IMG/VR virus record: IMGVR_UViG_3300030102_006934
Span: 62,001-126,000 of that record
DNA: 64,000 nucleotides
Direction: 5' to 3' (one strand)
The notes beneath the pieces were generated by a model that made no database searches, was not told the DNA's origin, and saw only the letters and a list, made by a program, of their open reading frames with translations. A program made the position numbers and the translations under genes. Shown in pieces: positions 33,869-57,348 of the stretch. Each line of letters starts with the position of its first letter. The first letter of the stretch is position 1.

Positions 33869-34249
33869 ATGCGTAAATTAATAAAAAAGATATTAAAAGA
33901 GAATGAATGGGACTGGGTTAAAAAAACGAAAATCTCAATTCCCTTTGACTATGTTGAAATAGGCACTGCGTATACAATAGATTTTATGGATCCCATGAGA
34001 TTTATTAAGGAGACAGAAAAATGTGGTGTTGCTAATGCAGAAGATATAGCATATAAGACTTATTATGCAATACCTAGGGAAAGAGCTTATCTTGAATCTG
34101 GAGCCCTGTACTGTGGAGATGGTAATACAGAACATTTTAAAGGCAGTAAAACTTCTTTGTCACTAAGCTTTTATGACAATCAAAATAAATTAATACATTC
34201 ATACTACTGGATAGCCGAAGAAGAAGGGGTAGAACTAAGACCTTATTAA
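33869..34249 (+). CDS. leader + WDW single-module protein
   Basis: MRKLIKKILKENEWDWVKK; module resembles third module of 46340. Confidence 0.7.
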   Translation: MRKLIKKILKENEWDWVKKTKISIPFDYVEIGTAYTIDFMDPMRFIKETEKCGVANAEDIAYKTYYAIPRERAYLESGALYCGDGNTEHFKGSKTSLSLSFYDNQNKLIHSYYWIAEEEGVELRPY

Positions 34250-34385
34250 AAAAAAAGCAGGAGCAATGCTTCGGTCCTTCCATCCAATCTATAATACAAA
34301 GATACGAATAATTTTTGACATGGCCAAATAATTCTTAAACTTTTTACCTGTTGTCTCTGTAAAATAAATTTACTATAGTTATTGT

Positions 34386-34808
34386 ATGAATGAATTAGAA
34401 TTAATGTTAGTCTGCAGTATAATAGTAGGTGCCTTTTACTTGGGAGTATACTTAAGCCATAAACGGTCTATAAAGAGAATTAAAGAAAAGTTATCCCAAC
34501 CAACAATTGATTTGGACGAGGGACTTACAGGAGACACAATTCCTGTAATCTCCGTTGTTGTAAATGCAAGACCATTCCAAATACCCATAGAGAAAAAGGA
34601 AGACTTTATTCCCAAGAAAAGAATGAGAGCACATAAACTAGAGAAAATGGGCCCATTAACTAAGTCTGGTAGACCTGATATGAGGTATAGTGTTAACAGA
34701 GGTGATAGAGGCAACATAGCAGATGGTTTCATGGAAGATGAAGAATATGTCGGTGCTCCTTTCTGTAATGATTGTTATGACACCACTGATTATGAATTCC
34801 CATTTTAA
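34386..34808 (+). CDS. TM-anchored hypothetical protein
   Basis: N-terminal TM; LTKSGRPDMRY motif; CxxC. Confidence 0.55.
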   Translation: MNELELMLVCSIIVGAFYLGVYLSHKRSIKRIKEKLSQPTIDLDEGLTGDTIPVISVVVNARPFQIPIEKKEDFIPKKRMRAHKLEKMGPLTKSGRPDMRYSVNRGDRGNIADGFMEDEEYVGAPFCNDCYDTTDYEFPF

Positions 34809-34875
34809 GCATTTTATTTGGCCATCTATAATAAAATCCGTATATTTGTATTAACTATTTAAAACAGTATTATAC

Positions 34876-35406
34876 ATGGCAGGATTTAAAGATATCGATG
34901 AGGTTGAAGCATACGCGAAGGAACTATTACATAGAGAATATAGAATAGAGGCTAATGGAAAGGTTCACTGGTTAACACCTAGTAAAATAGGCTATCGTTT
35001 TAAGTTTGATAATGCTAAGAGACGTTTTGGCCAATGTTCTTATAGAGATAAAAGAATAAGTCTATCAAAGCCACTGTGTGAGTATAACCTAAATAACTTT
35101 TTTCAGATTAATGATACCATACTACATGAGATAGCACACGCACTGTCTTATAAGATACATGGTAGAAGGGGGATGGGCCATTGTAAGAGATGGGTTCATG
35201 TGGCCAAATCTATTGGATGTAATGGTATTAGATGCTATGATAGTACTCAGGTTAATAATATAGAACATAAGTATACTTTGGTCTGTGATACATGTGGTGG
35301 TGAGAATCCAAGACATAGAAGACCTAGACAAGATTATTCATGTGCTAAGTGTGAACCTAAGAAGTTTGATGAGAGATACCTATTAAGAGTAGTACAAAAT
35401 TTTTAA
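34876..35406 (+). CDS. SprT-like zinc metalloprotease
   Basis: AKRRFGQC, ISLS, TILHEIAH, GH..RW..IG, two CxxC. Confidence 0.88.
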   Translation: MAGFKDIDEVEAYAKELLHREYRIEANGKVHWLTPSKIGYRFKFDNAKRRFGQCSYRDKRISLSKPLCEYNLNNFFQINDTILHEIAHALSYKIHGRRGMGHCKRWVHVAKSIGCNGIRCYDSTQVNNIEHKYTLVCDTCGGENPRHRRPRQDYSCAKCEPKKFDERYLLRVVQNF

Positions 35407-35407
35407 G

Positions 35408-35665
35408 ATGGGTTTTATAGAGGTTTCAGTAATAACATTTGTGGCAATACTAATCTTTTTTATCATTTCTATTGTAATATCACAAAGGAAATTTACAAGA
35501 GAACTAAAGGCACAGATGGAAGAGATAGATAGAAGGCAGATGGAGAGGATGAGAGTATATAGGGAGAATTTAATTATTGGTAGGGGTTATACTAGAACCG
35601 CCAATCTTGATGACGAAAGAAGCCTTAAACCAGCCAAACATATAAAACGCCATAGTATAAGATGA
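35408..35665 (+). CDS. TM-anchored hypothetical protein
   Basis: N-terminal TM. Confidence 0.55.
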   Translation: MGFIEVSVITFVAILIFFIISIVISQRKFTRELKAQMEEIDRRQMERMRVYRENLIIGRGYTRTANLDDERSLKPAKHIKRHSIR

Positions 35666-35726
35666 GTGATACAGTAATAGAGATAATGATAGTGGTGGGG
35701 GTGGTACTAATACCTGTATTGTTCTC

Positions 35727-36003
35727 TGGGGGCCTAGACGATTAAGGGCTGGGGAGTTGGTTAGTACTAGCTGGAGAGCCTACAGAACTTAGACTGGGGA
35801 CCCACAGAAGAAGGGGTGTAGAGCCCCCTATTTAGCCTAGGCGGGGAGCCAAGGGGGTAGGCTGGGGAGAGCCCCCTGGGGTAGGCGTATCCCCCCTCCC
35901 TGATCTACGGGTAGGCCGTACCAGGGGGTCGGTTCCGTTTATATTGTAAAACCCTAAAAGGTCCAGAAAATATGATCAAAAATTTTTTCTGAAAAAAAGG
36001 TCT
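35727..36003. other. GC-rich mostly non-coding island; candidate replication origin or packaging/terminus site
   Basis: Many G4-5 and C5-6 tracts, GGGTAGGC x3, AGAGCC x3, then AAAAATTTTTT tract. Confidence 0.45.
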
Positions 36004-36011
36004 TAGTATAT

Positions 36012-36248
36012 ATGAAAGAAGATATAAATAAAGAATTAATTAAGTGGTATCAAAGTAGATACCTAAACCCAAATTGTTATAGTCTTAAGGATGACCCCAA
36101 GATAATGAGAACATCTGGTATCTATTTTATTTTAGAAAGGACTAGAAATCGTAAACCAATGGAACCTAAAAGAGTAATGAATAAAGTCCGTATATGGGAT
36201 GGAACTCCGACTCAAAAGTTTTTCGGTAAGAAAAAAGTAGAAAGTTAA
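36012..36248 (+). CDS. hypothetical protein
   Basis: ORF. Confidence 0.45.
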   Translation: MKEDINKELIKWYQSRYLNPNCYSLKDDPKIMRTSGIYFILERTRNRKPMEPKRVMNKVRIWDGTPTQKFFGKKKVES

Positions 36249-36288
36249 AAAATTTTTGGGCAGTATTTTTTTCCGAAAAAAGGTCTGA

Positions 36289-37197
36289 CTAACTTAGTAA
36301 GTCTGTACGACCATCTATATAAGTTATATGTCCGTAATTACCACTCATTAGAATATCCTTGTACTCACCCCAATCTTTTGTTGTTCTATATAGGGTTGCG
36401 TTTCTTACAATATAACCCTTATTAGTAAAAGTACTACAGTAATGTTTCCATACTTCACCATGACCCTCTTTCCAATCAATACCCATGTCTATTAATGTTT
36501 GTTGTACCTCACACGCTTCATCATCATCCAACTGACTTATATCAATATAATATTCACCATTGTAAAAATCATAGTTAGGTATTTCATCAACCCAACCGAA
36601 GTCATTTTTAGACTCGTTGATATCGGTTAGTTTTGGTTGTAAAACATATACACCTCTGTTAAATTTTCCAGCAACTGTAGAACTAAATTGTGGAGCACAA
36701 TCTTTAGCGTAGAAATCTTTTTTACTATGTTGGTGTGTGCAAACCTTAACTTCAGCTGAATTAATCCCAGGTTCTAACCAATATATTGTAGGTATTCCTT
36801 GAGAGGAAACCCATTTACTTTTTTCAAGGGGACTATACCAATAAAATGGTTTGTTGTATAAAATATCAATAGTTTCTTCATCTACCTTAGAATCAATATC
36901 CTTAATCCAATCAAAGTCATTAGATTCTTTAATTGATTTAGGGTTAACTTTTTCGGCTGAATGCCACCATCCTTGATGTTTCTCTGACCATCTATATCCT
37001 AGACTTGTCGCTAGATTAAATAGTAAGTCTTCATCTATATCGTCTACATCGTCTACAAAGTTCTTTATAATATAACGCATTTTATCATCGTCTCTAAAAG
37101 ATATATAAGGTGAAATTGTTAATTCATCAGCTTCTATATCCTTAATCCATTGAAGGTCATTATTAATTTCTTCTCTGATAACTTTTTTCAGACTCAT
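36289..37197 (-). CDS. leader + three-module FDW polyprotein
   Basis: MSLKKVIREEINNDLQWIKD; IKESNDFDWIKD; INESKNDFGWVDE. Confidence 0.75.
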   Translation of the reverse strand: MSLKKVIREEINNDLQWIKDIEADELTISPYISFRDDDKMRYIIKNFVDDVDDIDEDLLFNLATSLGYRWSEKHQGWWHSAEKVNPKSIKESNDFDWIKDIDSKVDEETIDILYNKPFYWYSPLEKSKWVSSQGIPTIYWLEPGINSAEVKVCTHQHSKKDFYAKDCAPQFSSTVAGKFNRGVYVLQPKLTDINESKNDFGWVDEIPNYDFYNGEYYIDISQLDDDEACEVQQTLIDMGIDWKEGHGEVWKHYCSTFTNKGYIVRNATLYRTTKDWGEYKDILMSGNYGHITYIDGRTDLLS

Positions 37198-37248
37198 ACT
37201 AATAAATATTCTCTTTATTAATTAAATTAAATTTACTATACTTTAACC

Positions 37249-38502: not shown

Positions 38503-38946
38503 TTATTCTTTTGGTTTGACGGTGCTTAGTTCAGTATCCCTATGATTGTCAAAATAGTCTCTACAACGTTCTATTACCTCGTCTTTATCCTCTTGGGATT
38601 CTGGATACCAAGCCATCATCGATACAATTATAGATTTTTTATTATAGGCAGTTCCAGGTGGGTAAATATCAAAATAAAGTGAGTTAGGATATCCACTATC
38701 ATCTTTTATCCCATCACGAATACTATATACTGAACTACTAGTGTGTAAATCATCATTACTCTCTATTACACCAATTATATGATCTAATATCATTAATTGT
38801 TGTTCTTTTGGTATATTACCTAACCATACCTTATAATCACCTGGTGGGTATTTATCGATATTTAATATTTCATTTGGGATGAGTTTGATTTCTTTTACCC
38901 AATCAAAATCATTAATTTCTTCTCTTATAATATTCCTAAGACTCAT
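38503..38946 (-). CDS. leader + FDW single-module protein
   Basis: MSLRNIIREEINDFDWVKE. Confidence 0.7.
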   Translation of the reverse strand: MSLRNIIREEINDFDWVKEIKLIPNEILNIDKYPPGDYKVWLGNIPKEQQLMILDHIIGVIESNDDLHTSSSVYSIRDGIKDDSGYPNSLYFDIYPPGTAYNKKSIIVSMMAWYPESQEDKDEVIERCRDYFDNHRDTELSTVKPKE

Positions 38947-39276: not shown

Positions 39277-39678
39277 ATGGCGATAGGTAATATTAATAAT
39301 AAAGAAAGTGGGGCTTCGGTTAGGAATAAACTTAACCAGCTCATAAATGAGGTTAATACGTTAGCTTCTCAAATAAACTCAGGTGGCACTACTGGTGCGA
39401 CTTTAGAAAATAATATTATTTCTTTTGATACAACATTACAACAAGATGCTTATAGTGTTGATATAAGTGGAGCAGGTCCTTTTACTAGTATTTCTGATTA
39501 TGGATTTACAGTAATATCACCATCCGCAACAACAGCAACAACAATAAATACAAACATAACACTAAGTTATCCTAGCGGAACAACGGTAACCTATCCCAGC
39601 CCTTTAATTATTGGTGAGGATGGTGGTATTGTAGTACCTGATGGGGTAACTTTAATAATAACAAGTGGAACAACTTAA
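39277..39678 (+). CDS. short tail-fibre-associated protein
   Basis: N-terminal INN.ESGASVRNKLN shared with 41380. Confidence 0.6.
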   Translation: MAIGNINNKESGASVRNKLNQLINEVNTLASQINSGGTTGATLENNIISFDTTLQQDAYSVDISGAGPFTSISDYGFTVISPSATTATTINTNITLSYPSGTTVTYPSPLIIGEDGGIVVPDGVTLIITSGTT

Positions 39679-39704
39679 ATAATAATAAAATAAAAAAATA
39701 AATT

Positions 39705-41360
39705 ATGTCTTATATTAACGTAAATAATATTTTTTCATATACAAACCCTTATGGTGGTGCTCCAGGGCCAAATCCTCCATTCCCAGGTAAAATTAAAATC
39801 CTTTACTCCCCATTACTCCATGGTTTCATGTGTGATGCTATACATGGTGGTTCTCACGCAGAAGGAGAAAGGTCTAAAGCTTATGGTAGTCCTTCTCACG
39901 CGGAAGGTTATAAAACTGAAGCTTTTGGTGCTTATTCTCATTCTGAGGGTTATGAAACACAAGCTCACGCTGAGGGTTCTCACGCTGAGGGTTATAGAAC
40001 CGAGGTTGTGAGTGGTACTTCCGTTACTGGACATTATGCTCATGCTGAAGGTGGTTACACCAATGCTCATGGGCAATATTCACACGCTGAAGGTAGTAGT
40101 ACAAATGCTATTGGTAATACCTCACATGCTGAAGGAAAACATACAACATCTACTGGTATTAACTCACACGCTGAGGGTTTATTTTCTGAATCTATTGGTA
40201 ATGCTTCGCACGCAGAAGGACAAGGTACAATTGCTAGTGGTGATTTTTCCCATTCAGAAGGTTTTTTCACCCAATCTAATGGGGAGGGTTCTCACGCTGA
40301 GGGTTATAGGACAACGGCGAATGGTGATTATTCTCATTCTCAGGGGTATTGGACTACTACAGACGCTAACTACCAAACCGTAGTGGGTAAATATAATTCT
40401 CCGAGTGGTACTCAAGGGGCTTTTATTGTCGGTAATGGTGTCGCTAATAACGTACTAAACAATTTATTGGTTGCTGCTGGTAACGAAGTAGAAGTATTTG
40501 GTAACACAAAAACTGAGACTATACAAGTAACGGATGGAGCGACAGCAGGATATGTATTAACTTCTGACGCTTCAGGTAATGGTACTTGGCAATCAGTCGC
40601 TGGATTAACAGACACATTTGTAACAGGAGCTTCTTTAGCTGGTACTGATTTAGAAATAAATAGAAATAATGGTGAACCACAAATAGTTGTTGATTTATCA
40701 CCACTTAGTGGTGTTGATATCTTTACAACAGGTGCTACATACGATAATGGGACATCAACTGCCACATTTAATAGAAATGATGGTAATTCATATACTTTAG
40801 ATTTGTCCACTATGGATGTTAATGACACATTTGTTACAAGTTCCTCTTTAAGTGGTACAACCTTATTAATAGATAGAAACCAAGGAGAACCACAAATTAG
40901 TGTAGATTTAAGTTCATTGGCAGACGACACTATTGTAAATGGTTTTACTTATTCAAATAATAACTTAACAATTAGTCAAAATGGTCAATCTGATTTAACA
41001 ACTAACATAAGTGTTATGACAGGGGTAACTGTTAATGGTGTCGCTGACTTTACTGATGAGATTTTAATTAATTCTACAACCTTATTTGGACAAACTACAT
41101 GGAACCCAGCGGGTGTAAGTAGAGCAACCCATAGAATAGATGGTATAGTCACACCAACATTAGCAGATGGTACTGATGGGCAGTTATTACACATCTTCGT
41201 AGCAGATGTTTTAAGTGTTGGTAGCTCAACTGTAACAGTTACTACTAGTTTAGGTTTCAATACGATAGCCTTTAACGCACTTGGTGATTCCGTGACTTTA
41301 ATGTTTAATCAACCTTTTGGTTGGACAATCGTTGGTAGTTATAATGTGGTAATTAGTTAA
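39705..41360 (+). CDS. tail fibre/adhesin with YadA-head-like SHAEG repeats
   Basis: About 12 SHAEG/SHSEG 14-aa repeats, FIVGNG, GYVLTSDASGNGTW, DTFVTG repeats. Confidence 0.75.
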   Translation: MSYINVNNIFSYTNPYGGAPGPNPPFPGKIKILYSPLLHGFMCDAIHGGSHAEGERSKAYGSPSHAEGYKTEAFGAYSHSEGYETQAHAEGSHAEGYRTEVVSGTSVTGHYAHAEGGYTNAHGQYSHAEGSSTNAIGNTSHAEGKHTTSTGINSHAEGLFSESIGNASHAEGQGTIASGDFSHSEGFFTQSNGEGSHAEGYRTTANGDYSHSQGYWTTTDANYQTVVGKYNSPSGTQGAFIVGNGVANNVLNNLLVAAGNEVEVFGNTKTETIQVTDGATAGYVLTSDASGNGTWQSVAGLTDTFVTGASLAGTDLEINRNNGEPQIVVDLSPLSGVDIFTTGATYDNGTSTATFNRNDGNSYTLDLSTMDVNDTFVTSSSLSGTTLLIDRNQGEPQISVDLSSLADDTIVNGFTYSNNNLTISQNGQSDLTTNISVMTGVTVNGVADFTDEILINSTTLFGQTTWNPAGVSRATHRIDGIVTPTLADGTDGQLLHIFVADVLSVGSSTVTVTTSLGFNTIAFNALGDSVTLMFNQPFGWTIVGSYNVVIS

Positions 41361-41379
41361 TATAAAAAAATAAAAAAAA

Positions 41380-46339: not shown

Positions 46340-47809
46340 ATGAGTATCAAAAAATACATAAAAGAAGAGATGGATAGTTTTGACTGGATTAAGGACGTAA
46401 AAACTAATGATACTATCGCTAAAGAAATTTATGATACTCTAAAATGGCATAAGGTTCCCAATGTAACAACAGATTTTGTGAAAGTACCGTGGGTTGACAT
46501 TGTTTTTGCGGTAAGAAAAAGAAACTTAAGTGACTCCAAAATACCTTTAATCACCCCAAGTACATTTTACAAAGGTTTTACAAAATACGTAAAAGAATAT
46601 TACAATATTTTTGATCCTCAAACTGGTGTGTTAGAAATTTACAATAAAGTTAGGGCATTAATGGGGGATAAAATTCATGGAACTATTACTGAGTCTAATG
46701 ACTTTGGTTGGACAAATAGTTCTAAACTCATATACCCTCAAGACTTAGTCGGTTATTATTTTACTTACACTGAAAAAGAATATACAATAACTAAGGTGGA
46801 TGAAATGTATTTAAGTGATGATCCAGAAGATGAAAAACTCACCGTTTATTATAAGTATCGAGCTTATGAGGGGTTACGTAAAAACAAAATGGATGTGGAT
46901 ACTTTGATTTATAGAATCAAAGGTGGTGACTACGGTCTATATGACTTGGAGGGTAATCCTGTTAATCCAGATGATTTGGTATATAGTGATGGTAAGTTGG
47001 AAGATGTTGATTCTGTTAATGAAAATTCTGATTTTGATTGGGTGAGTGATGTTACCCCTTATATTGATAAGGTTACTGACCTACAAATTGGTGAGTATTA
47101 TGAAATAAAGGACATAGACACAAAACTTTTCACCATGTTGGTTGATTGTGGGTGGCACTATGAGTCTGAATTAATTAGAGATTTATATGATAAAGGTGAA
47201 ATACTTACCGTTAAAATTAGTGAAACGGTACCAAACGCTATATTAAATTACTATGTTTATTGTGATGGGCGTACAACATCATGGAAACCTAATAATACCG
47301 TTTCAAAGAGGGGTCCTGTAGCGGGAATAGAACTTTATAGTGAAATGGATACCTCACATCACCCAAGACATGATTGGATACCTTTCCACTCTTTTTATAT
47401 TACAGATGGTATGATAACATTTTACAGAGATAATAAGGATTTGAATGAGTCCGCAGAATTTGGTTGGATAGAAGATGTAAAACCAAATGTGTTGAAGGCT
47501 TTGGCTGATGCGAGTACGGGTGATGAGAGAATTAATTTTATTTATAGTGATGAAAATAAATATTTCACCTCCATTGAGGATGAAAAAGGTTTTAACTACT
47601 TTACTAGAGTATCTCTTATTTCATACTTAAGAAAAGTTAGGCAGGATTGGGATACCATGCCTGAGGTAATACTTAATAGTATGACCGTTGATGAGATGTT
47701 GGGTTTTATAGAAAAATTTTTAAAAGATAACTTCCCTGACCAACAACCAGTTGCTATATATGAGGACTATTTATATTTATATGAATTTATTAAACGTGGA
47801 TTAAAATAA
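46340..47809 (+). CDS. leader + four-module FDW polyprotein
   Basis: IKEEMDSFDWIKD; ITESNDFGW; VNENSDFDWVSD; LNESAEFGWIED. Confidence 0.8.
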   Translation: MSIKKYIKEEMDSFDWIKDVKTNDTIAKEIYDTLKWHKVPNVTTDFVKVPWVDIVFAVRKRNLSDSKIPLITPSTFYKGFTKYVKEYYNIFDPQTGVLEIYNKVRALMGDKIHGTITESNDFGWTNSSKLIYPQDLVGYYFTYTEKEYTITKVDEMYLSDDPEDEKLTVYYKYRAYEGLRKNKMDVDTLIYRIKGGDYGLYDLEGNPVNPDDLVYSDGKLEDVDSVNENSDFDWVSDVTPYIDKVTDLQIGEYYEIKDIDTKLFTMLVDCGWHYESELIRDLYDKGEILTVKISETVPNAILNYYVYCDGRTTSWKPNNTVSKRGPVAGIELYSEMDTSHHPRHDWIPFHSFYITDGMITFYRDNKDLNESAEFGWIEDVKPNVLKALADASTGDERINFIYSDENKYFTSIEDEKGFNYFTRVSLISYLRKVRQDWDTMPEVILNSMTVDEMLGFIEKFLKDNFPDQQPVAIYEDYLYLYEFIKRGLK

Positions 47810-47810
47810 A

Positions 47811-50800
47811 ATGGGGGATAAAAAGGAAGAATTTAATTGGGTTAATGATATCTCAAGTGATTACTGGGACTACCATAACGTTTTAGTGTTTAATGATGCC
47901 ATTAGTTATGAAGAGTTCGATGATTTAATCTCTCACGCTTTATATTCCAAGTCACCTAAAAATTCACACCAATGGGGAGACGATGGGAAAAAAGAGGCTT
48001 GGAATTATTTAACCCACCTTGTAAAAAGTTATAGTGTGGGTTATCTTATTTGGGATAAACCATATTTATCCGTTTCAGCTCAACACAAGCTGAAACAAGG
48101 AGACCCAAAATTAGTAAATTATAAGGATATAGTTAATCAAAAACCAAAGTTAGATGAGTCTGATGAATTTAGTTGGGTTAGAGATGAGGTTGATAGTCCG
48201 ATTAGGTTTAGTGTAGGTGATAAAATAAGGGTTATTAATGTGGGTGATGTACAAACTTTCATCGATTTTTTGGGTACTGCTGGTGTATATTATCGTAAAG
48301 GTCTACTTGGAACTAATATTGAGGGTGAGATTATAGATGGTGGTAATGAATATTTATTCCCCTTAAGGGAGAAAAATAGGGGTAAAATAATTTTTTTACC
48401 ATGGTTAGACATGGTAGATTATTGGGCTGACTCCTACCCTGATTTGGATGTTAGGTATGAATTTATAGATGATGACTTAAACGAATCTAGTGATTTAGAT
48501 TGGATTAGAGATGTTGAACCGCCTAATTTAGATTTTAGTTTTGATGGTAAGGAACATTGGGTTGACGTTTCACAAATAGATAGAGAAGGTAGGAAAAAAA
48601 TTGTAAATTATATTAAAAAAACTGTTCCAAATTACGAAGAATTTGAAAGTGATCTGTTCGGTCATATATCTAGAGGTAATTATAAAGGAATTATTATTCA
48701 TTGTGGTTCTGATAGGACCTATTATGAACCTGAAGAAGGTTTATTATGTAGTGCAAATAGTAGTTACGAAGATGATTATAAAATAGACAACCCATACTCA
48801 GATATGCTAAAATCTGTTTATCTTGATGGCCAAGAAATATTAGATTATATTACTGTGACTGATGATGTTGATGAAGAATTAGATGAATCTTTGGAGTGGT
48901 CAGACAAGGACGCACCTTTTGATGAAAAAGATAAAAGTTTTGAATCAGACCCTAGTTGGAAGAATGATGAAGATTGGTCATTAAACCCCGAAAGGTCTTA
49001 TTGGAAACAAGGGGATACTGGGGGTTCTGGTGGTGGTGACGTGAATGAGTCCAATGAGTTAGAATGGATTTATGATATAAGACCCACATTAAAAGACGTT
49101 TTTGATGAAAATTTGATTGGGGTTGGGGATATTTTAACACTTTATGGGACATTGGAAGATGAAAATGGTTTGGAAGAACAACAGGTAGATGATTTTAAAG
49201 TAAAGATAGAGACTGTCTCAAATTCAGAAAGACCTCGATTAGTCTCTACTTACTTCAAACCATTACAAAAAAAATATTGGGGTTTCTTGGGTTATGATGG
49301 TACGGGAGATATAAGGTTCACTAAAAAAGATGGTAACTTACAGTTGGTGGATAGAATTAGTGGTAAAGGTTTGGTAGAAGGGTCTAATGACTGGGATTGG
49401 GTGGAAGATATACCAGGAACAAAAGAATTTGACCAAAAATATAGATATTTTGAAATTTTGGCTTGTTATGGTGTTGATTATGAATCTGAAGAGTGTGATG
49501 ATGAATATTCACATTATGTTAGAATACCCAAATATGAGGCTGATGAAATATGGGACCATTCGGTTGATTATTTCGCTGGAATTGCTGATGGTGATTCTTA
49601 TGATGTTATTATGTACGCAATACAAAATAGACTAATATCACACTTTGAAATCAACGAAATTGTTATGTTTGAGGGTGTTAGAGAGTTGGATAAAAATACT
49701 TATGATAAACTAACAGATTATAGAGATGACTTGCTTACAAATGAATCATATTTTATCAATGAAAAAAGTGATGACTTTGACTGGGTTAAGGATATAAAAC
49801 CCAATTGGGGTACTTATTATGGTGGTATAATAATGAAGGACATTGAGGGTCTACCTAAAAAATTAGAAGATGTAACAAGTGAAATGTTACTACCTATTTG
49901 GATGAAAATAGAAACTATTAATAGACAAATATTAACTAGAAAAAACAGAGATGATAAACATGGTGTGAGTGAGACGTTAATTGATTCTATGGATCAAATC
50001 GAGTGGCTGTTTGGTAGAATAATGGCTTTGGTTGATGGTGAAACCGATAGTTTAGTATCTTCCAGAATGGAACCACAGGAGTATTACAATTCAAGAAAAC
50101 TAACTATAATTAGTTACATAAAAGGCATGGCTCAACAATTAGAACTACTCGGTGAATCTAATGACTTTGGTTGGGTAGAAGATGTAACACCAAGGATGGA
50201 CGCTACCCTATTAAAACCTGGACAAAAATTCTATGACAAATGGGGTGGCGTTATAAGAGTGTTAGAGTACTTGGGTAGGGATGATTCTGAAGGTGAAGTT
50301 TGTTATGAACCCCCTTGTAGTTTATTAAGATTTAGGAAAATAAAAGACCCAAGTGGTTACATACCAATTCCTGGATTACCAGCTGATGACCCACAAAACA
50401 CAGATATGGTAATGAACCCAAACGATTTCGATAGTTACATTGAATCTGGTAAATTAAAGTTAGTTAGTAAACGTACAATGTATGAATCAAAAGATTTTGA
50501 TTGGGTTAGGGATGTTGAAACCGATAGAACTGACTCTAAGTATTATATAATAGATAGAAGAAGTTTCTCTGGGGTTCCTGAAAAACAAAAAGATGAGTGG
50601 TTTATGATAGAAATATTAGAAAATGACAAGTATGGCATTCATTGGAGACCTTACGCATGGAATTTGGTGAATGTTCATACTTGGAATCCAACCCATCGAG
50701 TTGGAAAAATGTCAAACGATGAATTTAAAAATTTATTAGGTTTAGGTTCAAAGGATAAACCTTACTGGTACCCTCATGATGGGGATTTGACTGACCTACC

Positions 50801-51575
50801 CAAAAATTACGACCATGGGTTGTTGTCTCAACTAAATACCCCCAAAAATCTTAGGGAGTCTGATGATGTTAGCCATTTTAATTGGGTTAAAAAGATCTCA
50901 AGTGACGACTATGAACCCCGTACTGGTGACCACATTGAAATTGTTAATCAAGGAAAACCACATTTATTTAAAAATTGGTTATCCCCCACTATTTGGATGG
51001 ATTATAACATGGGTAAAATAACTAACACAGATGGTAATATAGAGGGTGTAGTACAAAATGATTACCCAACTCAAAACGCTCAAGATAATTTTGTCGTCAA
51101 AATAAAAGGTACCAAAAATGAATATATTTTTCTACCTAAGAGATATAAAATAAAACAAATTAAAGAAAAAACTAGGGACCCTGAATGGCACGGTTTAGAC
51201 ATTATATATAGACCTATTGAATTAAGATCAGAATTAAAAGAGGATTCTAGTGACACCTCTGATTGGGACTGGGCTAAAAAGATTGAACCAAAATATACAA
51301 AAATAGCACCAAATATATATCAATATGGTAGTGGGAGTTTACCAAGGATAAAGGTTGTATTTAAAAGGGTAGTGGATGGTGAAATAAAAACCACCGCAAT
51401 AGAGTTTGACGATTATGAGTTTTTAGATAGTGAAGAATACATGAATAGGCATTTCATTTTAATGGGTGTTGATGATGAGGATAATGATTGGATAGTTGAT
51501 GGTATAGCTTATCTTATTGGTGGGGGTGAGTATGAGTGGGATGTTAATTGGGATTCTATAGAAAATAATGGTTAG
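47811..51575 (+). CDS. ~10-11 module FDW polyprotein
   Basis: Motif recurs about every 110-130 aa across 1254 aa. Confidence 0.8.
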   Translation: MGDKKEEFNWVNDISSDYWDYHNVLVFNDAISYEEFDDLISHALYSKSPKNSHQWGDDGKKEAWNYLTHLVKSYSVGYLIWDKPYLSVSAQHKLKQGDPKLVNYKDIVNQKPKLDESDEFSWVRDEVDSPIRFSVGDKIRVINVGDVQTFIDFLGTAGVYYRKGLLGTNIEGEIIDGGNEYLFPLREKNRGKIIFLPWLDMVDYWADSYPDLDVRYEFIDDDLNESSDLDWIRDVEPPNLDFSFDGKEHWVDVSQIDREGRKKIVNYIKKTVPNYEEFESDLFGHISRGNYKGIIIHCGSDRTYYEPEEGLLCSANSSYEDDYKIDNPYSDMLKSVYLDGQEILDYITVTDDVDEELDESLEWSDKDAPFDEKDKSFESDPSWKNDEDWSLNPERSYWKQGDTGGSGGGDVNESNELEWIYDIRPTLKDVFDENLIGVGDILTLYGTLEDENGLEEQQVDDFKVKIETVSNSERPRLVSTYFKPLQKKYWGFLGYDGTGDIRFTKKDGNLQLVDRISGKGLVEGSNDWDWVEDIPGTKEFDQKYRYFEILACYGVDYESEECDDEYSHYVRIPKYEADEIWDHSVDYFAGIADGDSYDVIMYAIQNRLISHFEINEIVMFEGVRELDKNTYDKLTDYRDDLLTNESYFINEKSDDFDWVKDIKPNWGTYYGGIIMKDIEGLPKKLEDVTSEMLLPIWMKIETINRQILTRKNRDDKHGVSETLIDSMDQIEWLFGRIMALVDGETDSLVSSRMEPQEYYNSRKLTIISYIKGMAQQLELLGESNDFGWVEDVTPRMDATLLKPGQKFYDKWGGVIRVLEYLGRDDSEGEVCYEPPCSLLRFRKIKDPSGYIPIPGLPADDPQNTDMVMNPNDFDSYIESGKLKLVSKRTMYESKDFDWVRDVETDRTDSKYYIIDRRSFSGVPEKQKDEWFMIEILENDKYGIHWRPYAWNLVNVHTWNPTHRVGKMSNDEFKNLLGLGSKDKPYWYPHDGDLTDLPKNYDHGLLSQLNTPKNLRESDDVSHFNWVKKISSDDYEPRTGDHIEIVNQGKPHLFKNWLSPTIWMDYNMGKITNTDGNIEGVVQNDYPTQNAQDNFVVKIKGTKNEYIFLPKRYKIKQIKEKTRDPEWHGLDIIYRPIELRSELKEDSSDTSDWDWAKKIEPKYTKIAPNIYQYGSGSLPRIKVVFKRVVDGEIKTTAIEFDDYEFLDSEEYMNRHFILMGVDDEDNDWIVDGIAYLIGGGEYEWDVNWDSIENNG

Positions 51576-51577: not shown

Positions 51578-52792
51578 ATGGAGATAAGAAAAATAATAAG
51601 GGAAGAATTAAATGATTTCGATTGGGTTAGGGATGTTGAACCTGAATTAACGCCAGAAACATTAGAATTAATCTATAATAAGCCATTTCACTTTCACCGT
51701 ACAGAAGATAGTGGACCAAATATGAAGAATGGTAAACCAACAGTCTACTGGGTGGATAGGAGGTTGAGTGAGTTAAAAAATACTAATAAGTCTTCTAAGA
51801 ACCCTATTGCGGATGATAGAGAGTTTTTTTTATGTTATAAAGAACCCCAAGGACCACACACACTTCACCAATGTAGTGAAATGTATGCTAAAACAATAAT
51901 CAGTTATATCAAAAGAAAACAACTTGTTCAACAGAAAGAATTATCAGATATTAAAGAATCTGAAATTTATTTAAATAAAATACTTAATAGGTTATCCTTA
52001 ATTAAAGAAGATGGTAAAAAACCAGACATGGAGTGGGATTTTACTAAGACTAATTTAGATAAATCTAAAAAATGGGTTAAAACAAAAGAAGATGTTAAAA
52101 AATATCTTTCACTCTTATTTGATAAATTAAAAAATTTACCTAGAAAAACTAAAATTAAAATAATTAAGTATGTTTTAACTTCTTTTATTGGTTTATTAAC
52201 AATAAGCCAATTACAAGATATTGTGGATGAGACCTCACCAGAGAAGATAGAAATTAAGAAACCAATAAAACAAGAACTTCCAACAGACAAGGATTCAACC
52301 AAAGTTATGAACACTCAAATAAATAAAATTAGAAAACCTAGTGAAGAGTTAACTACTTTTCTAAAAAAAGAAGAGGGGTACGTTGATAAAGGTTATAAGA
52401 TTGGTGATGGTAAAATAACGATTGGTTGGGGTCATGCTGAGGATATTGATGGTTCTAAATATACATTGGGTCAACAGATTGACACAACAGAAGCCGAAAC
52501 ATTATTAAGACAAGATATTAAAGAATCTTCAGATGCTTTAAACAGAATTTTAGATGATTGGGAAAGTAAGGGTATCAAGGTTGATATTACACAAGATATG
52601 TATAATGTGATGACATCTATGGTTTTTAATATGGGTATCGGTAACTTTAGAAATTCTGATTTTATCCAATTAGTTAAGGGTAATGAGTTGAGTAGAGCTA
52701 AGGAAAAAATAAAAACAACAAGTTCACACTTATTTGGTAAATTTCCAGGTCTTAAAAAAAGAAGAAAATTAGAATCAGATTTATTTAATTAA
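51578..52792 (+). CDS. leader + FDW module + C-terminal phage lysozyme (GH24-like) domain
   Basis: MEIRKIIREELNDFDW; KKEEG...YKIGDGKITIGWGH, SMVFNMG.GNF, PGL..RR..E..LF. Confidence 0.8.
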   Translation: MEIRKIIREELNDFDWVRDVEPELTPETLELIYNKPFHFHRTEDSGPNMKNGKPTVYWVDRRLSELKNTNKSSKNPIADDREFFLCYKEPQGPHTLHQCSEMYAKTIISYIKRKQLVQQKELSDIKESEIYLNKILNRLSLIKEDGKKPDMEWDFTKTNLDKSKKWVKTKEDVKKYLSLLFDKLKNLPRKTKIKIIKYVLTSFIGLLTISQLQDIVDETSPEKIEIKKPIKQELPTDKDSTKVMNTQINKIRKPSEELTTFLKKEEGYVDKGYKIGDGKITIGWGHAEDIDGSKYTLGQQIDTTEAETLLRQDIKESSDALNRILDDWESKGIKVDITQDMYNVMTSMVFNMGIGNFRNSDFIQLVKGNELSRAKEKIKTTSSHLFGKFPGLKKRRKLESDLFN

Positions 52793-53010: not shown

Positions 53011-53013
53011 GAT

Positions 53014-53220: not shown

Positions 53221-53224
53221 TACT

Positions 53225-53686: not shown

Positions 53687-53747
53687 TGTTTTTTGTTTTT
53701 TTCTATATACAAATATAGTGAATTATCATTAAGCCACCAAATCTAAA

Positions 53748-53951: not shown

Positions 53952-53977
53952 ATCCTATATTTTTATATAAATATAAA

Positions 53978-54018
53978 TAAAAAAACTCATTCTCCAAAAG
54001 AAAATGAGTTTTTTTTTT
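53978..54018. terminator. bidirectional terminator hairpin
   Basis: A-run-CTCATT...AATGAG-T-run. Confidence 0.65.
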
Positions 54019-54019
54019 A

Positions 54020-54153
54020 CTTGGGGGAGGGTATCTAACCCTCCACAGCTTCTCTTCGTGATTAATACTTCTAAAAAGATCTTCAATATTAACCCTTATT
54101 ACCCGAAACCAACCTACTCGTCAGTAGGTCGCATATACTTTTCGCCACCCAAG
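54020..54153 (-). ncRNA. tRNA-like RNA with ~65-nt extended variable arm
   Basis: CTTGGG/CCCAAG acceptor-like stem, TGGCGAAAAGTATATGC D-arm-like, GACCTAC/GTAGGTT stem, GGAGGG-TTAGATA-CCCTCC T-arm-like; TTGACT..TATTAT upstream and terminator downstream. Confidence 0.55.
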
Positions 54154-54196
54154 ATTACTTAATAATAATAATAATAATAAAACTATTAGTCAACAC

Positions 54197-54580
54197 TTAC
54201 TCACTAAAATTAAATTTCTTTAGACATTTACCATTTAAAGATAATCCTATCATTTGGTTCTTTAAATTTTCCGTCTCTTCTAAGACAGCCTTTTTTGTCC
54301 ATACTTCACGTGTATCCATTAAATGACGAGTATCGAAACCAATTACCCACCCCCCTTTTAACTCTTCATTAGTAAAGTTACCTTCATTTATGTTGGGTCT
54401 CAAATCGAAAAATATCTCGTAAGTTCTACTAAAGGTTAATCCACCATGGACGTAAACTGGTATTTCATCGTATTCCACACCCCACATTGGATGGTCTTTA
54501 AAAATGATTACGTACCCATTACCCCATCCTTGTTTATTCCAATCGTTTTCTAAGACAAATGATAAAATTTTAATTTTCAT
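54197..54580 (-). CDS. conserved phage hypothetical protein
   Basis: GWGNGYV...HP..G...VHGGLTF...W.IGFDT.H motif. Confidence 0.7.
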   Translation of the reverse strand: MKIKILSFVLENDWNKQGWGNGYVIIFKDHPMWGVEYDEIPVYVHGGLTFSRTYEIFFDLRPNINEGNFTNEELKGGWVIGFDTRHLMDTREVWTKKAVLEETENLKNQMIGLSLNGKCLKKFNFSE

Positions 54581-54642
54581 AATACAAATATACTACAATT
54601 TTTTATGTAAAACAAGATATTTATGAATATATAAAACATGGG

Positions 54643-57348
54643 ATGTTAAAAAAAGTTACTTTACCTAAAAATATTAATTTTTTAAAGGAGTCGGAATTTG
54701 ATTTTGTTGACGATAAAACCAACAACCCTTTAGATGGTGTTAAGTTTACTATGAATAAATCACCAATAAAAGGTGACGAGAAAAACATTTACTATATAAT
54801 AGATGACGGTGGCTTATTTGTTAAAATAAAATGGTACGGTGGTGGTTATTTAAAAAGAACCTTTAAGAGAGATAGGGTAATGGATTTATTTAAAAGAGGG
54901 GTTTGGGAACCTTATTTTGAACCTACTAAGAACATTAATGAATCAGAAAATGGTGACTTTGATTGGATAAAAGATACTACCCCAAAAGAGATAGACAACT
55001 ATTATAAAGTTGTTTTGGATTTTTTTGATTGGAGTAGGAAATATAAAGGTTACAGTTATAGTGCAAATGATGTAGGTGTTGTAGAGTGGTACATACCAAT
55101 AGTTGATTTTCCATATCCGTTTCATGACTATTATTTTTACGCAACCCCTTATTGGGAGGGTAATGGTGTTATGAATGTTACCGCTGTGGATGAACAAGGC
55201 CACGAAATAGAGTTACACACAATACCATTACCTAAATTTAAATACGAAGAACAACTAAAAGAATGGTTAACGTCAGAGTACCCAAAAATAGTTTACGAAG
55301 AAATAAAACATTTTGAAGACACTCGGCAATATAGTGGTGATACTTTAACCGAAACCAAAGATTTACAGTGGATAAAAGATGTGGGTACCAATAGAATCGA
55401 TTTGGTTAAAAAAATAAAAGAGACGTTATCTAATCATGGTGTTGAGGTAGAATGGGAAAGGGACCACTTGGCTTATAACCAAGAAGACACAGATGGTACT
55501 AGGGGTGAGGTTTTTGCTAAATTTTTCTATGATGCTGGTGATAGACAGTTTTTTATTGAACTTATAGAATCGGAAAATGATTTATATGGTTTTTATGTTT
55601 ATGAATATAATGAACAATATGACACTTATTATGTAAACGCTAATTATAATTCCCTTGGTATACCTAGGGAATCAGATGAAACTTGGCGTCATGTGTGTTG
55701 GACGGTTCTAAATCAAATGGATGCTTTTCCAAAAAAAGATAAGGTTGGTGATTTAGCAGATTATTTAAAAGAATCTGATGATTTCGAATGGGTTAGAGAT
55801 TACAAAGATGTTTTTGATAAAAACAAAAACTACGCTCTATACGTGGGTAAAATTAATATTGATGACATGACTTTACCGCCAAGGGAAAATCCGAATAACA
55901 AATCAATATACATTCATAAATTAAATAAACAGGTGAAGTTTATTCTTAGTTTAATACATCAGTTTGAAGATATGGGTTATGATATAAGGGAGTTAGATAG
56001 AGAGATTGCCATCCCCTCAAACCAAAGAGTTTCTTGGATATACATAAACGGTAAAGAAAGTAAATCTGGAAAACCAATGTCGTTAGAGTTTGATGACATA
56101 CCCCCTGGAGACCCAACCTATGATGGTCAATATGAGATTATTGATAATTTTAAAGACTTTTATTTTTTAATTACTAATGAAGTTATTAAAGAGTCCGATA
56201 ATTTGGATTGGATTAGGGATATTAAATCACAAGGTTTTGAAAAAAGTAAAAGTTATGTTGTTGATGTTAGTAACTTAATGGTAGATACACCAATGTCTGT
56301 TTCCCCTACTTCTGAGGAATACACTAAATTAACAAGAGCAGATGTTCTAGACAAATTTAAAGCGTTAGGTTATAATGTTGATGATATTTCTGTTGCTGAC
56401 GCTGATTATCTATATATTGAACCTAACGATGAAGCTGGTTATTGGGATGATACTGTTTGGGTTAAGCAAACTCATTGGGTAGACTATGATATGGAACACA
56501 ACACACCCGACCCAACTTATAATGGCAAGTACGAAATGATAGATGTTAATGACCTTATGTTTTTACTTGATAATAAATTTATTAGTGAATCTAAATCAAT
56601 AACTGAAGTAGCGGGTATTTCATTTGAATCAAGGGAATGGGCTAAAATAATAAATGACAAAATATTAAAAAACCCAAATGAAAAAGAGAGGTTGATTATT
56701 GATGGTTACGATTATCCAGAAGCCTTTAAGAGTTTCCCAATAGACTATATTGTGATTGATTTTTACGATAAGTTAACTGGTTATGCTCAAGAACACTCTG
56801 GTTATGATAAAGATGGTAACTATGTTGTACTATTATATATACAACCTAAAGTAATTAGTGGTACTGGTGGGTTTAACCTAAGAACAGTACTTAATCATGA
56901 AATGAAACACGCATGGGACGATTATAACAGGCTTTCTAAAGGCCAACCTAGTATTGATAAGAATAAGGAAAACAGGGAGTTGTATAACAAAGATTTTATA
57001 TTAATGTTATCAGATAAAAATGTTCGTGGACCCATAAAAGAAATCTTAAAATATTATTATTATTTATCTGAACTAGAGAAGACGGCTTACCTAGAAAATG
57101 TTTATGATGGTAATTTAAATTACGAAAAAATAATAAGGGATATATCTAGTAAAGACTTCGAACCTTTTAAAGAAAGATTTGATTTGGATATTAATTGGCA
57201 TTTAATGAATACGGCTTACGATATACCATTCTTGAAGAAATTTAAATCCCCAATAGAATTTATTGATTATAGTTCTGAGGAATTAAGGTCAAAAGCGGTT
57301 GATATGATTAAGAAAATCAACAAAATGAAATATATTCATAATAAATAA
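54643..57348 (+). CDS. five-module FDW polyprotein with C-terminal HExxH metallopeptidase-like domain
   Basis: LKESEFDF; INESENGDFDWIKD; LTETKDLQWIKD; LKESDDFEWVRD; IKESDNLDWIRD; LNHEMKHAWD...E..AY. Confidence 0.78.
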   Translation: MLKKVTLPKNINFLKESEFDFVDDKTNNPLDGVKFTMNKSPIKGDEKNIYYIIDDGGLFVKIKWYGGGYLKRTFKRDRVMDLFKRGVWEPYFEPTKNINESENGDFDWIKDTTPKEIDNYYKVVLDFFDWSRKYKGYSYSANDVGVVEWYIPIVDFPYPFHDYYFYATPYWEGNGVMNVTAVDEQGHEIELHTIPLPKFKYEEQLKEWLTSEYPKIVYEEIKHFEDTRQYSGDTLTETKDLQWIKDVGTNRIDLVKKIKETLSNHGVEVEWERDHLAYNQEDTDGTRGEVFAKFFYDAGDRQFFIELIESENDLYGFYVYEYNEQYDTYYVNANYNSLGIPRESDETWRHVCWTVLNQMDAFPKKDKVGDLADYLKESDDFEWVRDYKDVFDKNKNYALYVGKINIDDMTLPPRENPNNKSIYIHKLNKQVKFILSLIHQFEDMGYDIRELDREIAIPSNQRVSWIYINGKESKSGKPMSLEFDDIPPGDPTYDGQYEIIDNFKDFYFLITNEVIKESDNLDWIRDIKSQGFEKSKSYVVDVSNLMVDTPMSVSPTSEEYTKLTRADVLDKFKALGYNVDDISVADADYLYIEPNDEAGYWDDTVWVKQTHWVDYDMEHNTPDPTYNGKYEMIDVNDLMFLLDNKFISESKSITEVAGISFESREWAKIINDKILKNPNEKERLIIDGYDYPEAFKSFPIDYIVIDFYDKLTGYAQEHSGYDKDGNYVVLLYIQPKVISGTGGFNLRTVLNHEMKHAWDDYNRLSKGQPSIDKNKENRELYNKDFILMLSDKNVRGPIKEILKYYYYLSELEKTAYLENVYDGNLNYEKIIRDISSKDFEPFKERFDLDINWHLMNTAYDIPFLKKFKSPIEFIDYSSEELRSKAVDMIKKINKMKYIHNK

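What the first reader, a model, noticed from the sequence alone, without database searches (positions are those of the whole stretch)
33869..56580. The same cargo modules recur stand-alone and in different polyproteins
Seen by eye: the 33869 protein resembles module 3 of 46340 (IG..Y.I...CG...YC.G...HS.Y). Module 2 of 36289 resembles module 1 of 51578 (ET...[LI]YNKPF...PT.YW...C...C). Module 3 of 36289 resembles module 3 of 47811 ([YW][IV]D[IV]SQ[LI]D...Y[IL]DG). An early and a late module of 47811 share GD.I...N.G...NIEG...IFLP...LD..Y. Modules 4 and 5 of 54643 share F.K.K.Y...GY...YI...DPTY.G.YE.ID. Similarity stops at the FDW motifs. Inference: the motif-coding DNA (GAATCTAATGACTTTGATTGG-like) acts as a recombination joint for domain shuffling.
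Basis: partly seen in the sequence, partly recalled or inferred. Interest (0 to 1): 0.7.

Follow-up and report, generated by a model that had tools for sequence, protein, structure and literature searches.

The report
Tagged, shuffled cargo modules in phage polyproteins
An uncultured 380-kb marine T4-like phage strings roughly 100-residue protein modules into long polyproteins, each module preceded by one short tag that looks like a head-protease cutting site plus a docking peptide, and related phages have reshuffled the modules exactly at that tag.

Summary
The fifth (33869 vs 46340 module 3) is not.

The window belongs to a 380,343-bp T4-like jumbo phage that encodes an S77 prohead protease and a gp23 capsid protein. 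About 25 genes (8.6% of the genome) carry 58 or more copies of one tag, [LI]-x-E-S-[DN]-D-F-D-W-[VI]-[KR]-D-[IV]-x-P.

Comparison with metagenomic relatives shows whole modules inserted, deleted and moved between polyproteins. Every mapped DNA breakpoint lies inside the tag-coding DNA. A profile of the tag finds 369 multi-tag protein clusters among 1.84 billion representatives, with a median tag spacing of 112 residues.

The tag is conserved as protein, not as DNA. Synonymous sites are close to neutral, and two copies share only about 7 nt of exact in-register match on average. So the "recombination joint" reading is only partly supported.

My best explanation is inferred, not shown. The tag is a T4-type protease site plus a targeting or recognition peptide. 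The polyproteins are loaded into the prohead and cut into independent modules, so module order is free. Microhomology plus selection then place viable crossovers in the tag.

I rate it a new variant of a known kind.

The parts
31203..31472 (+). Small tagged ORF. The list gives ATG at 31239, but an in-frame GTG at 31203 adds the full leader ENLIRKIIREE before MDGFDWARDI.
   Evidence: upstream 36 nt read directly
33869..34249 (+). Stand-alone tagged module, 126 aa. Tag at 33890-33928 (ILKENEWDWVKKT).
   Evidence: A homologous module is embedded in polyprotein P0018/L006.
36289..37197 (-). Three-module polyprotein, 302 aa. Tags at 37135-37173, 36895-36933 and 36580-36618.
   Evidence: The orthologue has 5 modules in L004, and 3 in L006 with the middle one replaced.
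38503..38946 (-). Stand-alone tagged module, 147 aa. Tag at 38887-38925.
   Evidence: Paralogue of the C-terminal module of the ORF at genome 369117-370403, E = 1e-30 to 1e-39.
46340..47809 (+). Four-module polyprotein, 489 aa. Tags at 46361-46399, 46685-46723, 47015-47053 and 47441-47479.
   Evidence: The L006 orthologue has 6 modules, including a 38503-like one.
47811..51575 (+). Ten-module polyprotein, 1254 aa. Tags at 47814-47852, 48150-48188, 48477-48515, 49041-49079, 49374-49412, 49758-49796, 50148-50186, 50478-50516, 50859-50897 and 51246-51284.
   Evidence: 41 metagenomic homologues have different module strings. DNA breakpoints mapped.
51578..52792 (+). N-terminal leader and tag (51599-51637), then a ~105-aa module homologous to 36289.m2, then an I-K-E-S site without FDW at residues 126-129, a Lys-rich linker, and a Phage_lysozyme domain (residues 263-399).
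   Evidence: (PF00959, E = 3.5e-20)
54643..57348 (+). Polyprotein, 901 aa. A degenerate first tag (FLKESEFDFVDD), then tags at 54940-54978, 55345-55383, 55765-55803 and 56185-56223. A ~250-aa C-terminal domain with an invariant HExxH follows FISE-S and SITE-V sites that have no FDW.
46664..46759 (+). Example internal junction (…ITE|SNDFGW…): [LI]-x-E site six residues before the invariant Trp.
49353..49448 (+). Junction before module 5 of 47811 (LVEGSNDWDWVEDI). It is the left parent of the L006 joint that deletes module 5.
49737..49832 (+). Junction before module 6 of 47811 (INEKSDDFDWVKDI). It is the right parent of the same L006 joint. The crossover lies within TGGGT.
48456..48551 (+). Junction before module 3 of 47811 (DDDLNESSDLDW). 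In L004 an extra module sits here, flanked by a perfect 29-nt direct repeat of this junction DNA.

Best explanation
These genes encode tagged cargo of the phage head.

Each ~100-residue module, stand-alone or in a string, is preceded by a ~13-residue tag with two parts:
- a T4-type prohead-protease site ([LI]-x-E, cut after Glu);
- a retained peptide, S-[DN]-D-F-D-W-[VI]-[KR]-D-[IV]-x-P, that serves as a docking or recognition element.

Stand-alone genes add a T4-CTS-like N-terminal leader (M-x-[IL]-[KR]-K-[IV]-I-[KR]-E-E).

Proposed sequence of events:
1. The polyproteins are expressed with the structural genes.
2. They are incorporated into the prohead core.
3. The S77 protease cuts them at every junction into independent small proteins, plus a lysozyme and an HExxH domain.
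4. These proteins leave the capsid with the DNA.

Because each module works on its own after cleavage, its position in a string does not matter. Recombination between the short, similar tag-coding stretches (microhomology, kept in frame by selection) can therefore freely insert, delete and move modules. This produces the combinatorial module orders seen among relatives.

Shown: the tag, its site-like conservation, the presence of the protease gene, module recurrence, and breakpoints within the tag.
Inferred: cleavage, packaging, ejection and module function.
For: Genome type:
- S77 prohead protease, E = 4.5e-29; gp23 capsid protein, E = 1e-62.
- The MCP propeptide has L-Y-E51 and I-S-E60 next to the position aligned to the T4 gp23* N-terminus.

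The tag:
- 58 copies in 25 ORFs.
- 38 of 39 internal copies have [LIVMF]-x-E with the Glu 5-10 residues before W, against a background of 2.7% per residue.
- 512 of 520 copies do so in 145 distant representatives.
- T4 gp21 cuts after Glu, for example at ITE-6 and LTE-619 in Alt, and T4 internal proteins carry a cleaved CTS (PMC5694885; PMC3012670).

The leader:
- It occurs at 16 ORF N-termini and at 0 of 2222 internal Met positions.
- One bearer is a core-cluster protein next to the protease.

Other support:
- The catalytic C-terminal domains (lysozyme, HExxH) are preceded by [LI]-x-E-S sites.
- A separate amidase with a PG-binding domain at 6945-7907 could be the endolysin, which would leave the tagged lysozyme as a virion enzyme.
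- A shared upstream box, ATATTTAT, is enriched at tagged genes and also precedes the terminase, protease and large (presumed structural, not annotated here) genes (11/25 vs 65/433, p = 8e-4).
- Position independence: L006 lacks modules 5 and 7 in its 47811-type gene but carries them in its 54643-type gene.
- 47 of 50 module families have two or more different neighbours on each side.
- Junctions are low-confidence linkers in the AF2 model, while module 5 folds at pLDDT 75-86.
- The module families are mostly unrelated: 11 of 780 profile pairs match.
Against: - There is no direct evidence of cleavage, packaging or ejection.
- Modules are mostly acidic (median pI 4.9), unlike the basic T4 IPII/IPIII (from my own knowledge).
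- [LI]-x-E is not depleted inside modules (O/E 0.99), so the protease would need context to choose junctions.
- If the cut is after Glu, the FDW part stays on every mature module, and its role is then unexplained.
- 47811 and 54643 lack the canonical N-terminal leader.
- The upstream box is not shown to be a late promoter, and it is absent before the MCP gene.
- The AF2 models are shallow and of low confidence.
Confidence: 0.5

Rival explanations
1. The polyproteins are not cut by the head protease. They act as intact polyvalent proteins, or are processed by an embedded or separate metallopeptidase (the HExxH domain at the end of 54643, or small HExxH or SprT-like proteins) before or after injection. 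The tag is the site or handle for that enzyme.
For: - The HExxH...D motif is invariant in the 54643 C-terminal domain and in its 37-38%-identical stand-alone paralogue.
- Weak Peptidase_M91 hit, E = 0.021.
- Atlas neighbours include LPD23 and SprT-like clusters at 0.86-0.87.
- A SprT-like gene lies at 34876-35406.
- Polyvalent proteins commonly carry zincin-like peptidases proposed to release domains (PMC5512222).
Against: - The Pfam hit is below threshold, and the AF2 model (pLDDT 73) has no significant PDB fold match.
- Only one polyprotein type carries the domain, whereas the tag is in 25 genes.
- The conserved [LI]-x-E fits the specificity of the S77-type enzyme that the genome does encode.
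Confidence: 0.17
2. The tag-coding DNA is itself a dedicated recombination site, selected at DNA level to drive domain shuffling.
For: - All mapped breakpoints lie in the tag DNA.
- A perfect 29-nt direct repeat flanks one inserted module.
- Ser at position -5 is almost always TCN (24:1), and RTT codons are favoured at +1.
- Conserved sequence elements at the variable internal-protein loci of T-even phages, and PeSL cassettes, are known to mediate gene shuffling (PMC2839356).
Against: - Synonymous sites are nearly as variable as codon usage predicts.
- The mean exact in-register match is about 7 nt, and only 6.6% of copy pairs share 14 nt or more.
- Conservation is at the amino-acid level and includes N-terminal copies, where no joint is needed.
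- The same peptide consensus holds across 145 clusters that are less than 50% identical to each other.
Confidence: 0.1
3. The strings are uncleaved repeat proteins. All modules are diverged copies of one ~100-residue domain whose conserved N-terminal strand or turn is the FDW motif, for example a virion surface or fibre protein.
For: - Module length is strikingly uniform: median tag spacing 112 residues, IQR 98-124.
- The genes lie next to tail-fibre-like genes at 39277-46137.
- Loose single-linkage clustering gives one 211-member cluster.
Against: - Only 11 of 780 family-profile pairs are related.
- The tag also precedes modules of 230-655 residues, and the protein that ends in a lysozyme domain.
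- The tag is at the very N-terminus, behind a leader, in 111 of 145 representatives.
- Junctions are predicted to be linkers, not domain cores.
Confidence: 0.08

Closest known systems
T4 internal proteins (IPI, IPII, IPIII, Alt) with capsid targeting sequence, cleaved by the gp21 prohead protease
   Same: - The genome is T4-like and has an S77 protease and a gp23 capsid protein.
- Both have a short N-terminal leader ending in [LI]-x-E.
- Both have a diverse, fast-evolving set of small proteins that share only the signal.
- In T-even phages the IP loci are also hypervariable (PMC3012670, PMC5694885, PMC2839356).
   Different: - Here the signal is repeated inside long polyproteins (up to 10 copies in this window, 13 in relatives).
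- It includes a conserved FDW element on the C-terminal side of the predicted cut.
- The modules are mostly acidic.
- No sequence similarity to T4 IPs was found.
- Packaging and cleavage are untested.
Polyvalent proteins of phages and conjugative elements (Iyer et al. 2017, PMC5512222)
   Same: - Many unrelated domains sit in one polypeptide.
- They are predicted to be delivered with the DNA.
- Domains may be released by a peptidase.
- A cell-wall hydrolase and a possible zincin-like domain are present.
   Different: - Polyvalent proteins have no common inter-domain tag.
- Their hallmark domains (MPTase, ART, ParB and others) were not detected here at significant scores.
- Modules here are uniform ~100-residue orphans.
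Ejection and inner-body proteins of phiKZ-like giant phages (SPN3US, 201phi2-1), processed by the S80 protease at [SAG]-x-E
   Same: Both are giant phages with many packaged proteins cut after Glu at a three-residue motif, with paralogous families and propeptides that carry several sites.
   Different: - The protease family differs (S77 here).
- The P3 preference differs (Leu/Ile here).
- No repeated-tag polyprotein architecture has been described there.
PeSL cassettes and the conserved elements at T-even IP loci that mediate modular gene shuffling
   Same: Short conserved sequences at module borders coincide with insertion, deletion and replacement breakpoints among close relatives.
   Different: - Those elements are non-coding promoter and stem-loop units that move whole genes.
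- Here the repeat is coding, conserved as peptide, and moves in-frame protein modules.
Viral polyproteins and encapsulin cargo-loading peptides (functional analogies only)
   Same: One translation product is cut into independent proteins at repeated sites, and a short peptide directs cargo into a protein shell.
   Different: The lineages and enzymes are unrelated. No homology is claimed.

Membership tests
T4-type internal head proteins (CTS cargo) | The genome encodes a T4-type (S77) prohead protease and a gp23-type capsid protein | tested here: met
   PF03420, E = 4.5e-29; PF07068, E = 9.9e-63
T4-type internal head proteins (CTS cargo) | A short N-terminal targeting leader ending in a [LI]-x-E cleavage site | tested here: met
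   The leader M-x-[IL]-[KR]-K-[IV]-I-[KR]-E-E is found at 16 N-termini and at 0 of 2222 internal Met positions. It matches the T4 CTS in form only; no sequence homology is shown.
T4-type internal head proteins (CTS cargo) | Cleaved by the prohead protease inside the prohead | not testable with these tools
   Only site conservation is available. The protease-peptide complex prediction gave no verdict.
T4-type internal head proteins (CTS cargo) | Present in the mature capsid and injected with the DNA | not testable with these tools
   This needs virion proteomics. No isolate exists: the nearest cultured relative has 42% MCP identity and lacks the motif.
Polyvalent proteins (Iyer et al. 2017) | 2-15 disparate domains in one phage-encoded polypeptide | tested here: met
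   3-10 modules per ORF. The families are mostly unrelated by hhalign.
Polyvalent proteins (Iyer et al. 2017) | Hallmark domains such as a zincin-like MPTase | tested here: inconclusive
   The HExxH motif is invariant, but the Pfam M91 hit has E = 0.021, below cut-off, and there is no fold match. The lysozyme is present.
phiKZ-like ejection proteins (S80 substrates) | S80 protease with [SAG]-x-E sites | tested here: not met
   The protease matches S77. P3 is Leu or Ile in most tags.
PeSL / IP-locus recombination cassettes | A non-coding promoter and stem-loop element flanks the shuffled genes | tested here: not met
   The repeat is in frame and conserved as peptide, with near-neutral synonymous sites.

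The most novel reading that the evidence does not exclude
The FDW tag is a previously undescribed, portable signal for loading into the capsid and being cut free. If so, a lineage of marine T4-like jumbo phages holds an open-ended cassette library of injected effectors, with hundreds of orphan ~100-residue families. New combinations arise by in-frame recombination at the tag. This would be a protein-level analogue of an integron, and a ready-made tag for packaging foreign proteins into large capsids.
Probability: 0.35. Interest if true: 0.8.

Novelty: new variant of a known kind. Interest (0 to 1): 0.66.

Why it matters
If the tag really directs loading and release of cargo, it has three consequences.

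- It defines a large, unexplored pool of proteins that ocean jumbo phages inject into their hosts: 295 strict module families in the 211 proteins sampled here, almost all without any Pfam or PHROG match. These are likely counter-defence or takeover factors.
- It shows how such a pool can diversify. Cleavage makes module order irrelevant, so crude recombination at a 13-codon tag yields viable new combinations.
- The tag makes the cargo set predictable from sequence alone in uncultured phages, and it could serve as an engineering handle.

If the tag is only a linker, the finding reduces to an unusual repeat-protein family.

Tried and rejected
- **Megablast of the region against the phage collection:** no match.
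- **Pfam and PHROGs on 19 tagged proteins:** only the lysozyme scores significantly.
- **ESM Atlas:** the 54643 C-terminal domain matches only viral hypothetical clusters, and 38503 matches nothing usable.
- **AF2 of 47811 modules 4-5:** mean pLDDT 56, so it was used only for the linker-versus-domain contrast.
- **AF2 of the HExxH domain:** pLDDT 73, but no PDB match at E <= 0.001. I therefore do not call it a peptidase.
- **Complex prediction, protease plus a 33-residue junction peptide:** no verdict. It counts neither for nor against.
- **Test for depletion of [LI]-x-E inside modules:** none seen (O/E 0.99, against 1.14 in other genes).
- **Test for module-wise allelic replacement between the window and L004:** identity is patchy, but the change points are not sharply at tags.
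- **Population variants in public runs:** the phage is present in many marine metagenomes, but only as short low-depth contigs. The single 'joint' was the next gene's tag matching an internal tag.
- **T4 late promoter TATAAATA:** not enriched upstream of tagged genes. A different box, ATATTTAT, is enriched.
- **Literature search for the motif in phages:** nothing relevant.
- **Idea that all modules are one superfamily:** rejected at profile level.


Full report
**What the window is**

The window is bases 62,001-126,000 of a single 380,343-bp virus record. CheckV rates it 100% complete, and its GC content is 31%.
- The genome encodes a T4-type prohead protease (Peptidase_S77, E = 4.5e-29) and a gp23-type major capsid protein (E = 9.9e-63).
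- It also has a portal gene, a large-terminase gene and an acidic scaffold-like gene in T4 order.
- The nearest cultured phages share only 42-43% capsid identity: Flavobacterium phage immuto and Microcystis phage Mel-JY01.
- Close relatives exist only in marine metagenomes.

It is therefore an uncultured marine T4-like jumbo phage.

**The motif**

An HMM built from the obvious copies finds 58 confident instances in 25 ORFs. These ORFs total 10,882 codons, 8.6% of the genome. Twenty-four instances lie in the window.
- Internal consensus: [LI](-8) x E(-6) S [DN] D F D W(0) [VI] [KR] D [IV] x P(+6).
- N-terminal copies read M-x-[IL]-[KR]-K-[IV]-I-[KR]-E-E-x-[ND]-D-F-D-W-[VI]-[KR]-D-[IV].
- 38 of 39 internal copies have [LIVMF]-x-E with the Glu 5-10 residues before the Trp, and 33 of them at 6-7 residues. 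The background rate is 2.7% per residue.
- Segments between tags cluster at 91-130 residues.

Four of the five named pairs hold; 33869 vs 46340.m3 does not (z = 0.8, hhalign P = 0.075). The other four score:

| Pair | SW z-score vs 1000 shuffles | Other statistic |
|---|---|---|
| 36289.m2 vs 51578.m1 | 14.6 | phmmer E = 2.6e-7 |
| 54643.m4 vs m5 | 10.2 | phmmer E = 1.2e-4 |
| 36289.m3 vs 47811.m3 | 4.2 | hhalign P = 1.8e-5 |
| 47811.m2 vs m9 | 4.3 | hhalign P = 1.7e-4 |

Much stronger recurrences exist elsewhere in the genome:
- the stand-alone 38503 protein against the last module of a 428-residue ORF (E = 1e-30);
- 47811.m4 against the last module of an 861-residue ORF (E = 1e-21);
- the 54643 C-terminal domain against a stand-alone 409-residue paralogue (37% identity).

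Some internal tags still carry the complete N-terminal leader, for example ...SIKNIIREELDDFDW... at residue 295 of the 428-residue ORF. These strings therefore arose partly by fusion of stand-alone tagged genes.

**Relatives show shuffling directly**

A search with the 1254-residue protein returned 41 metagenomic homologues whose module strings differ by whole modules. Two syntenic contigs, L004 and L006, were fetched.
- L004's 47811-type gene has two extra modules.
- L006's 47811-type gene lacks modules 5 and 7, but L006's 54643-type gene contains module 5 (75% identity) and module 7 (87%).
- L006 also embeds a 38503-like module and a 33869-like module in polyproteins, while keeping the stand-alone orthologues.

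At DNA level every homology block ends at a tag.
- Insertion 1 in L004 is flanked by a perfect 29-nt direct repeat of the junction DNA.
- Insertion 2 in L004 is flanked by a 15-nt repeat plus TGGGTT.
- The module-5 deletion in L006 switches parents inside TGGGT, the Trp-Val codons.
- In the L006 54643-type gene, block ends lie within -18 to +17 nt of Trp codons, apart from one end about 31 nt short of the next tag.

Without any pre-cutting, homology-block starts cluster at W-8 and ends at W+6/7.

**How widespread the architecture is**

A profile of 48 tags was searched against 1.84 billion representative proteins.
- It finds 369 clusters at E <= 1e-3 and 94 at E <= 1e-10.
- Each hit has 2-13 tags.

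Among the 145 newly found representatives:
- the consensus is unchanged;
- 512 of 520 tags have the [LIVMF]-x-E site;
- the median spacing is 112 residues (IQR 98-124);
- 111 proteins start with the tag.

Other observations on distribution and diversity:
- 904 modules fall into 295 strict families. Of the 50 looser families with at least 3 members, 47 have at least 2 different neighbours on each side.
- Only 11 of 780 family-profile pairs are related, so this is not one repeated domain.
- The DFDW[VI] DNA pattern occurs 21 times in this genome. It occurs 0 times in Flavobacterium phage immuto and in a 484-kb uncultured phage with the closest capsid protein.
- Four other IMG/VR fragments match the stricter NDFDW DNA pattern; NESNDFDW-type junctions were confirmed in three of them. 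One fragment has a gp23 gene.

**Is the tag a DNA joint or a peptide signal?**

Codon counts at conserved residues follow genomic usage closely. Against 300 codon-resampled controls:

| Measure | Observed | Simulated |
|---|---|---|
| Same-codon fraction | 0.606 | 0.569 |
| Nucleotide identity | 0.604 | 0.591 |
| Mean longest in-register exact run | 7.3 nt | 6.8 nt |

The exceptions are Ser at position -5 (TCN 24, AGY 1) and a preference for RTT at +1. These suggest common descent or occasional conversion of copies rather than a maintained DNA site.

Joints do fall in the tag DNA, but the tag is kept for its peptide. The homology it offers is micro-scale. Selection for in-frame, tag-preserving products is an equally good reason for the breakpoint pattern.

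**Mechanism proposed**

T4 gp21 cuts after Glu in short motifs such as ITE and LTE. T4 internal proteins enter the prohead core through a cleaved N-terminal capsid targeting sequence (PMC5694885; PMC3012670). The following points here fit that model:
- The protease is of the same family.
- The capsid propeptide has L-Y-E51 and I-S-E60 close to the position aligned with the T4 gp23* N-terminus.
- The leader also heads FDW-less proteins in the head-core gene cluster.
- The enzyme-like C-terminal domains follow [LI]-x-E-S sites: IKE-S before the lysozyme linker in 51578, and FISE-S / SITE-V in 54643.
- A separate amidase with a PG-binding domain at 6945-7907 is a candidate endolysin. That fits the tagged lysozyme being a virion enzyme.
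- An upstream ATATTTAT box is enriched at tagged genes (p = 8e-4). It also precedes the terminase, protease and several large (presumed structural, not annotated here) genes.

I infer that the strings are loaded into proheads and cut at every tag. This explains why module order is free to change.

Several things remain unexplained:
- the role of the FDW part that would stay on each product (docking element or protease exosite are the options);
- the acidity of the modules (median pI 4.9);
- the lack of depletion of internal [LI]-x-E sites.

**Comparison with known systems**

The closest functional relatives are:
- the T4 internal proteins with their CTS;
- the polyvalent proteins of Iyer et al. 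(PMC5512222);
- the ejection proteins of phiKZ-like phages.

The closest evolutionary analogy is shuffling at conserved border elements in T4-type genomes (PMC2839356). None of these has a repeated in-frame tag that delimits uniform orphan modules. My limited literature search found no description of the motif. I rate the finding a new variant of a known kind.

Noticed in passing
window 39277-39678, 39705-41360, 41380-46137: Three fibre-like ORFs sit immediately upstream of the polyprotein operon. The 133-aa and 1585-aa ORFs share an almost identical ~35-residue N-terminus (M[AT]IGNINNKESGASVRNKLNQLINEVNTLASQI...). The 551-aa ORF has SHAEG-type repeats. The 1585-aa ORF has many ~60-70-residue internal repeats. 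In L004 the corresponding region holds only a 355-aa ORF, so this is a second variable cassette region.
   Followed up: partly
genome C1:152592-154200 and 158543-158950 (outside the window, beside the protease and MCP genes): Small proteins in the head-core cluster start with the same leader (MNIRKIIKEE..., MRSLIKKVLRE..., ...LVKKIIREEE...) but lack FDW. One of them (153796-154200, minus strand, 134 aa) has an HELIH motif.
   Followed up: partly
whole genome; for example upstream of window 33869, 36289(-), 46340 and 54643: A conserved box, ATATTTAT(T/A)A, lies 12-40 nt before the start codons of 76 of 458 genes. These include the terminase, prohead protease and large (presumed structural, not annotated here) genes. 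It is possibly this phage's late or host-type promoter. T4's TATAAATA is not used.
   Followed up: partly
window 17100-18155: A full-length DnaJ chaperone (J domain, CXXCXGXG zinc domain and C-terminal domain) is encoded by the phage.
   Followed up: no
window 6945-7907: A peptidoglycan-binding domain plus an Amidase_2 domain: a likely endolysin, separate from the tagged lysozyme at 51578.
   Followed up: no
window 34876-35406: A SprT-like zinc metallopeptidase (PF10263, E = 1.9e-12) without the tag sits among the tagged genes and is conserved in L004 and L006.
   Followed up: no
window 59015-60076(-) and 60633-61538(-): Thymidylate synthase and a UvdE UV-damage endonuclease.
   Followed up: no
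genome C1:352918-354147 (locus L024): A stand-alone 409-aa paralogue (37%) of the 54643 C-terminal HExxH domain. It starts ...IIKHFLTE-VGGIS, which mirrors the SITE-VAGIS junction in the polyprotein.
   Followed up: partly
L004 16730-17080 and 21546-22145; L006 15593-15964: Relatives' contigs carry SET-domain and DOT1-like methyltransferase genes and a 4HBT thioesterase between the polyprotein genes, according to precomputed Pfam labels.
   Followed up: no
window 13494-14948: A 484-aa protein with DUF2828 and DUF7788 domains (E = 1e-31 and 8e-50).
   Followed up: no
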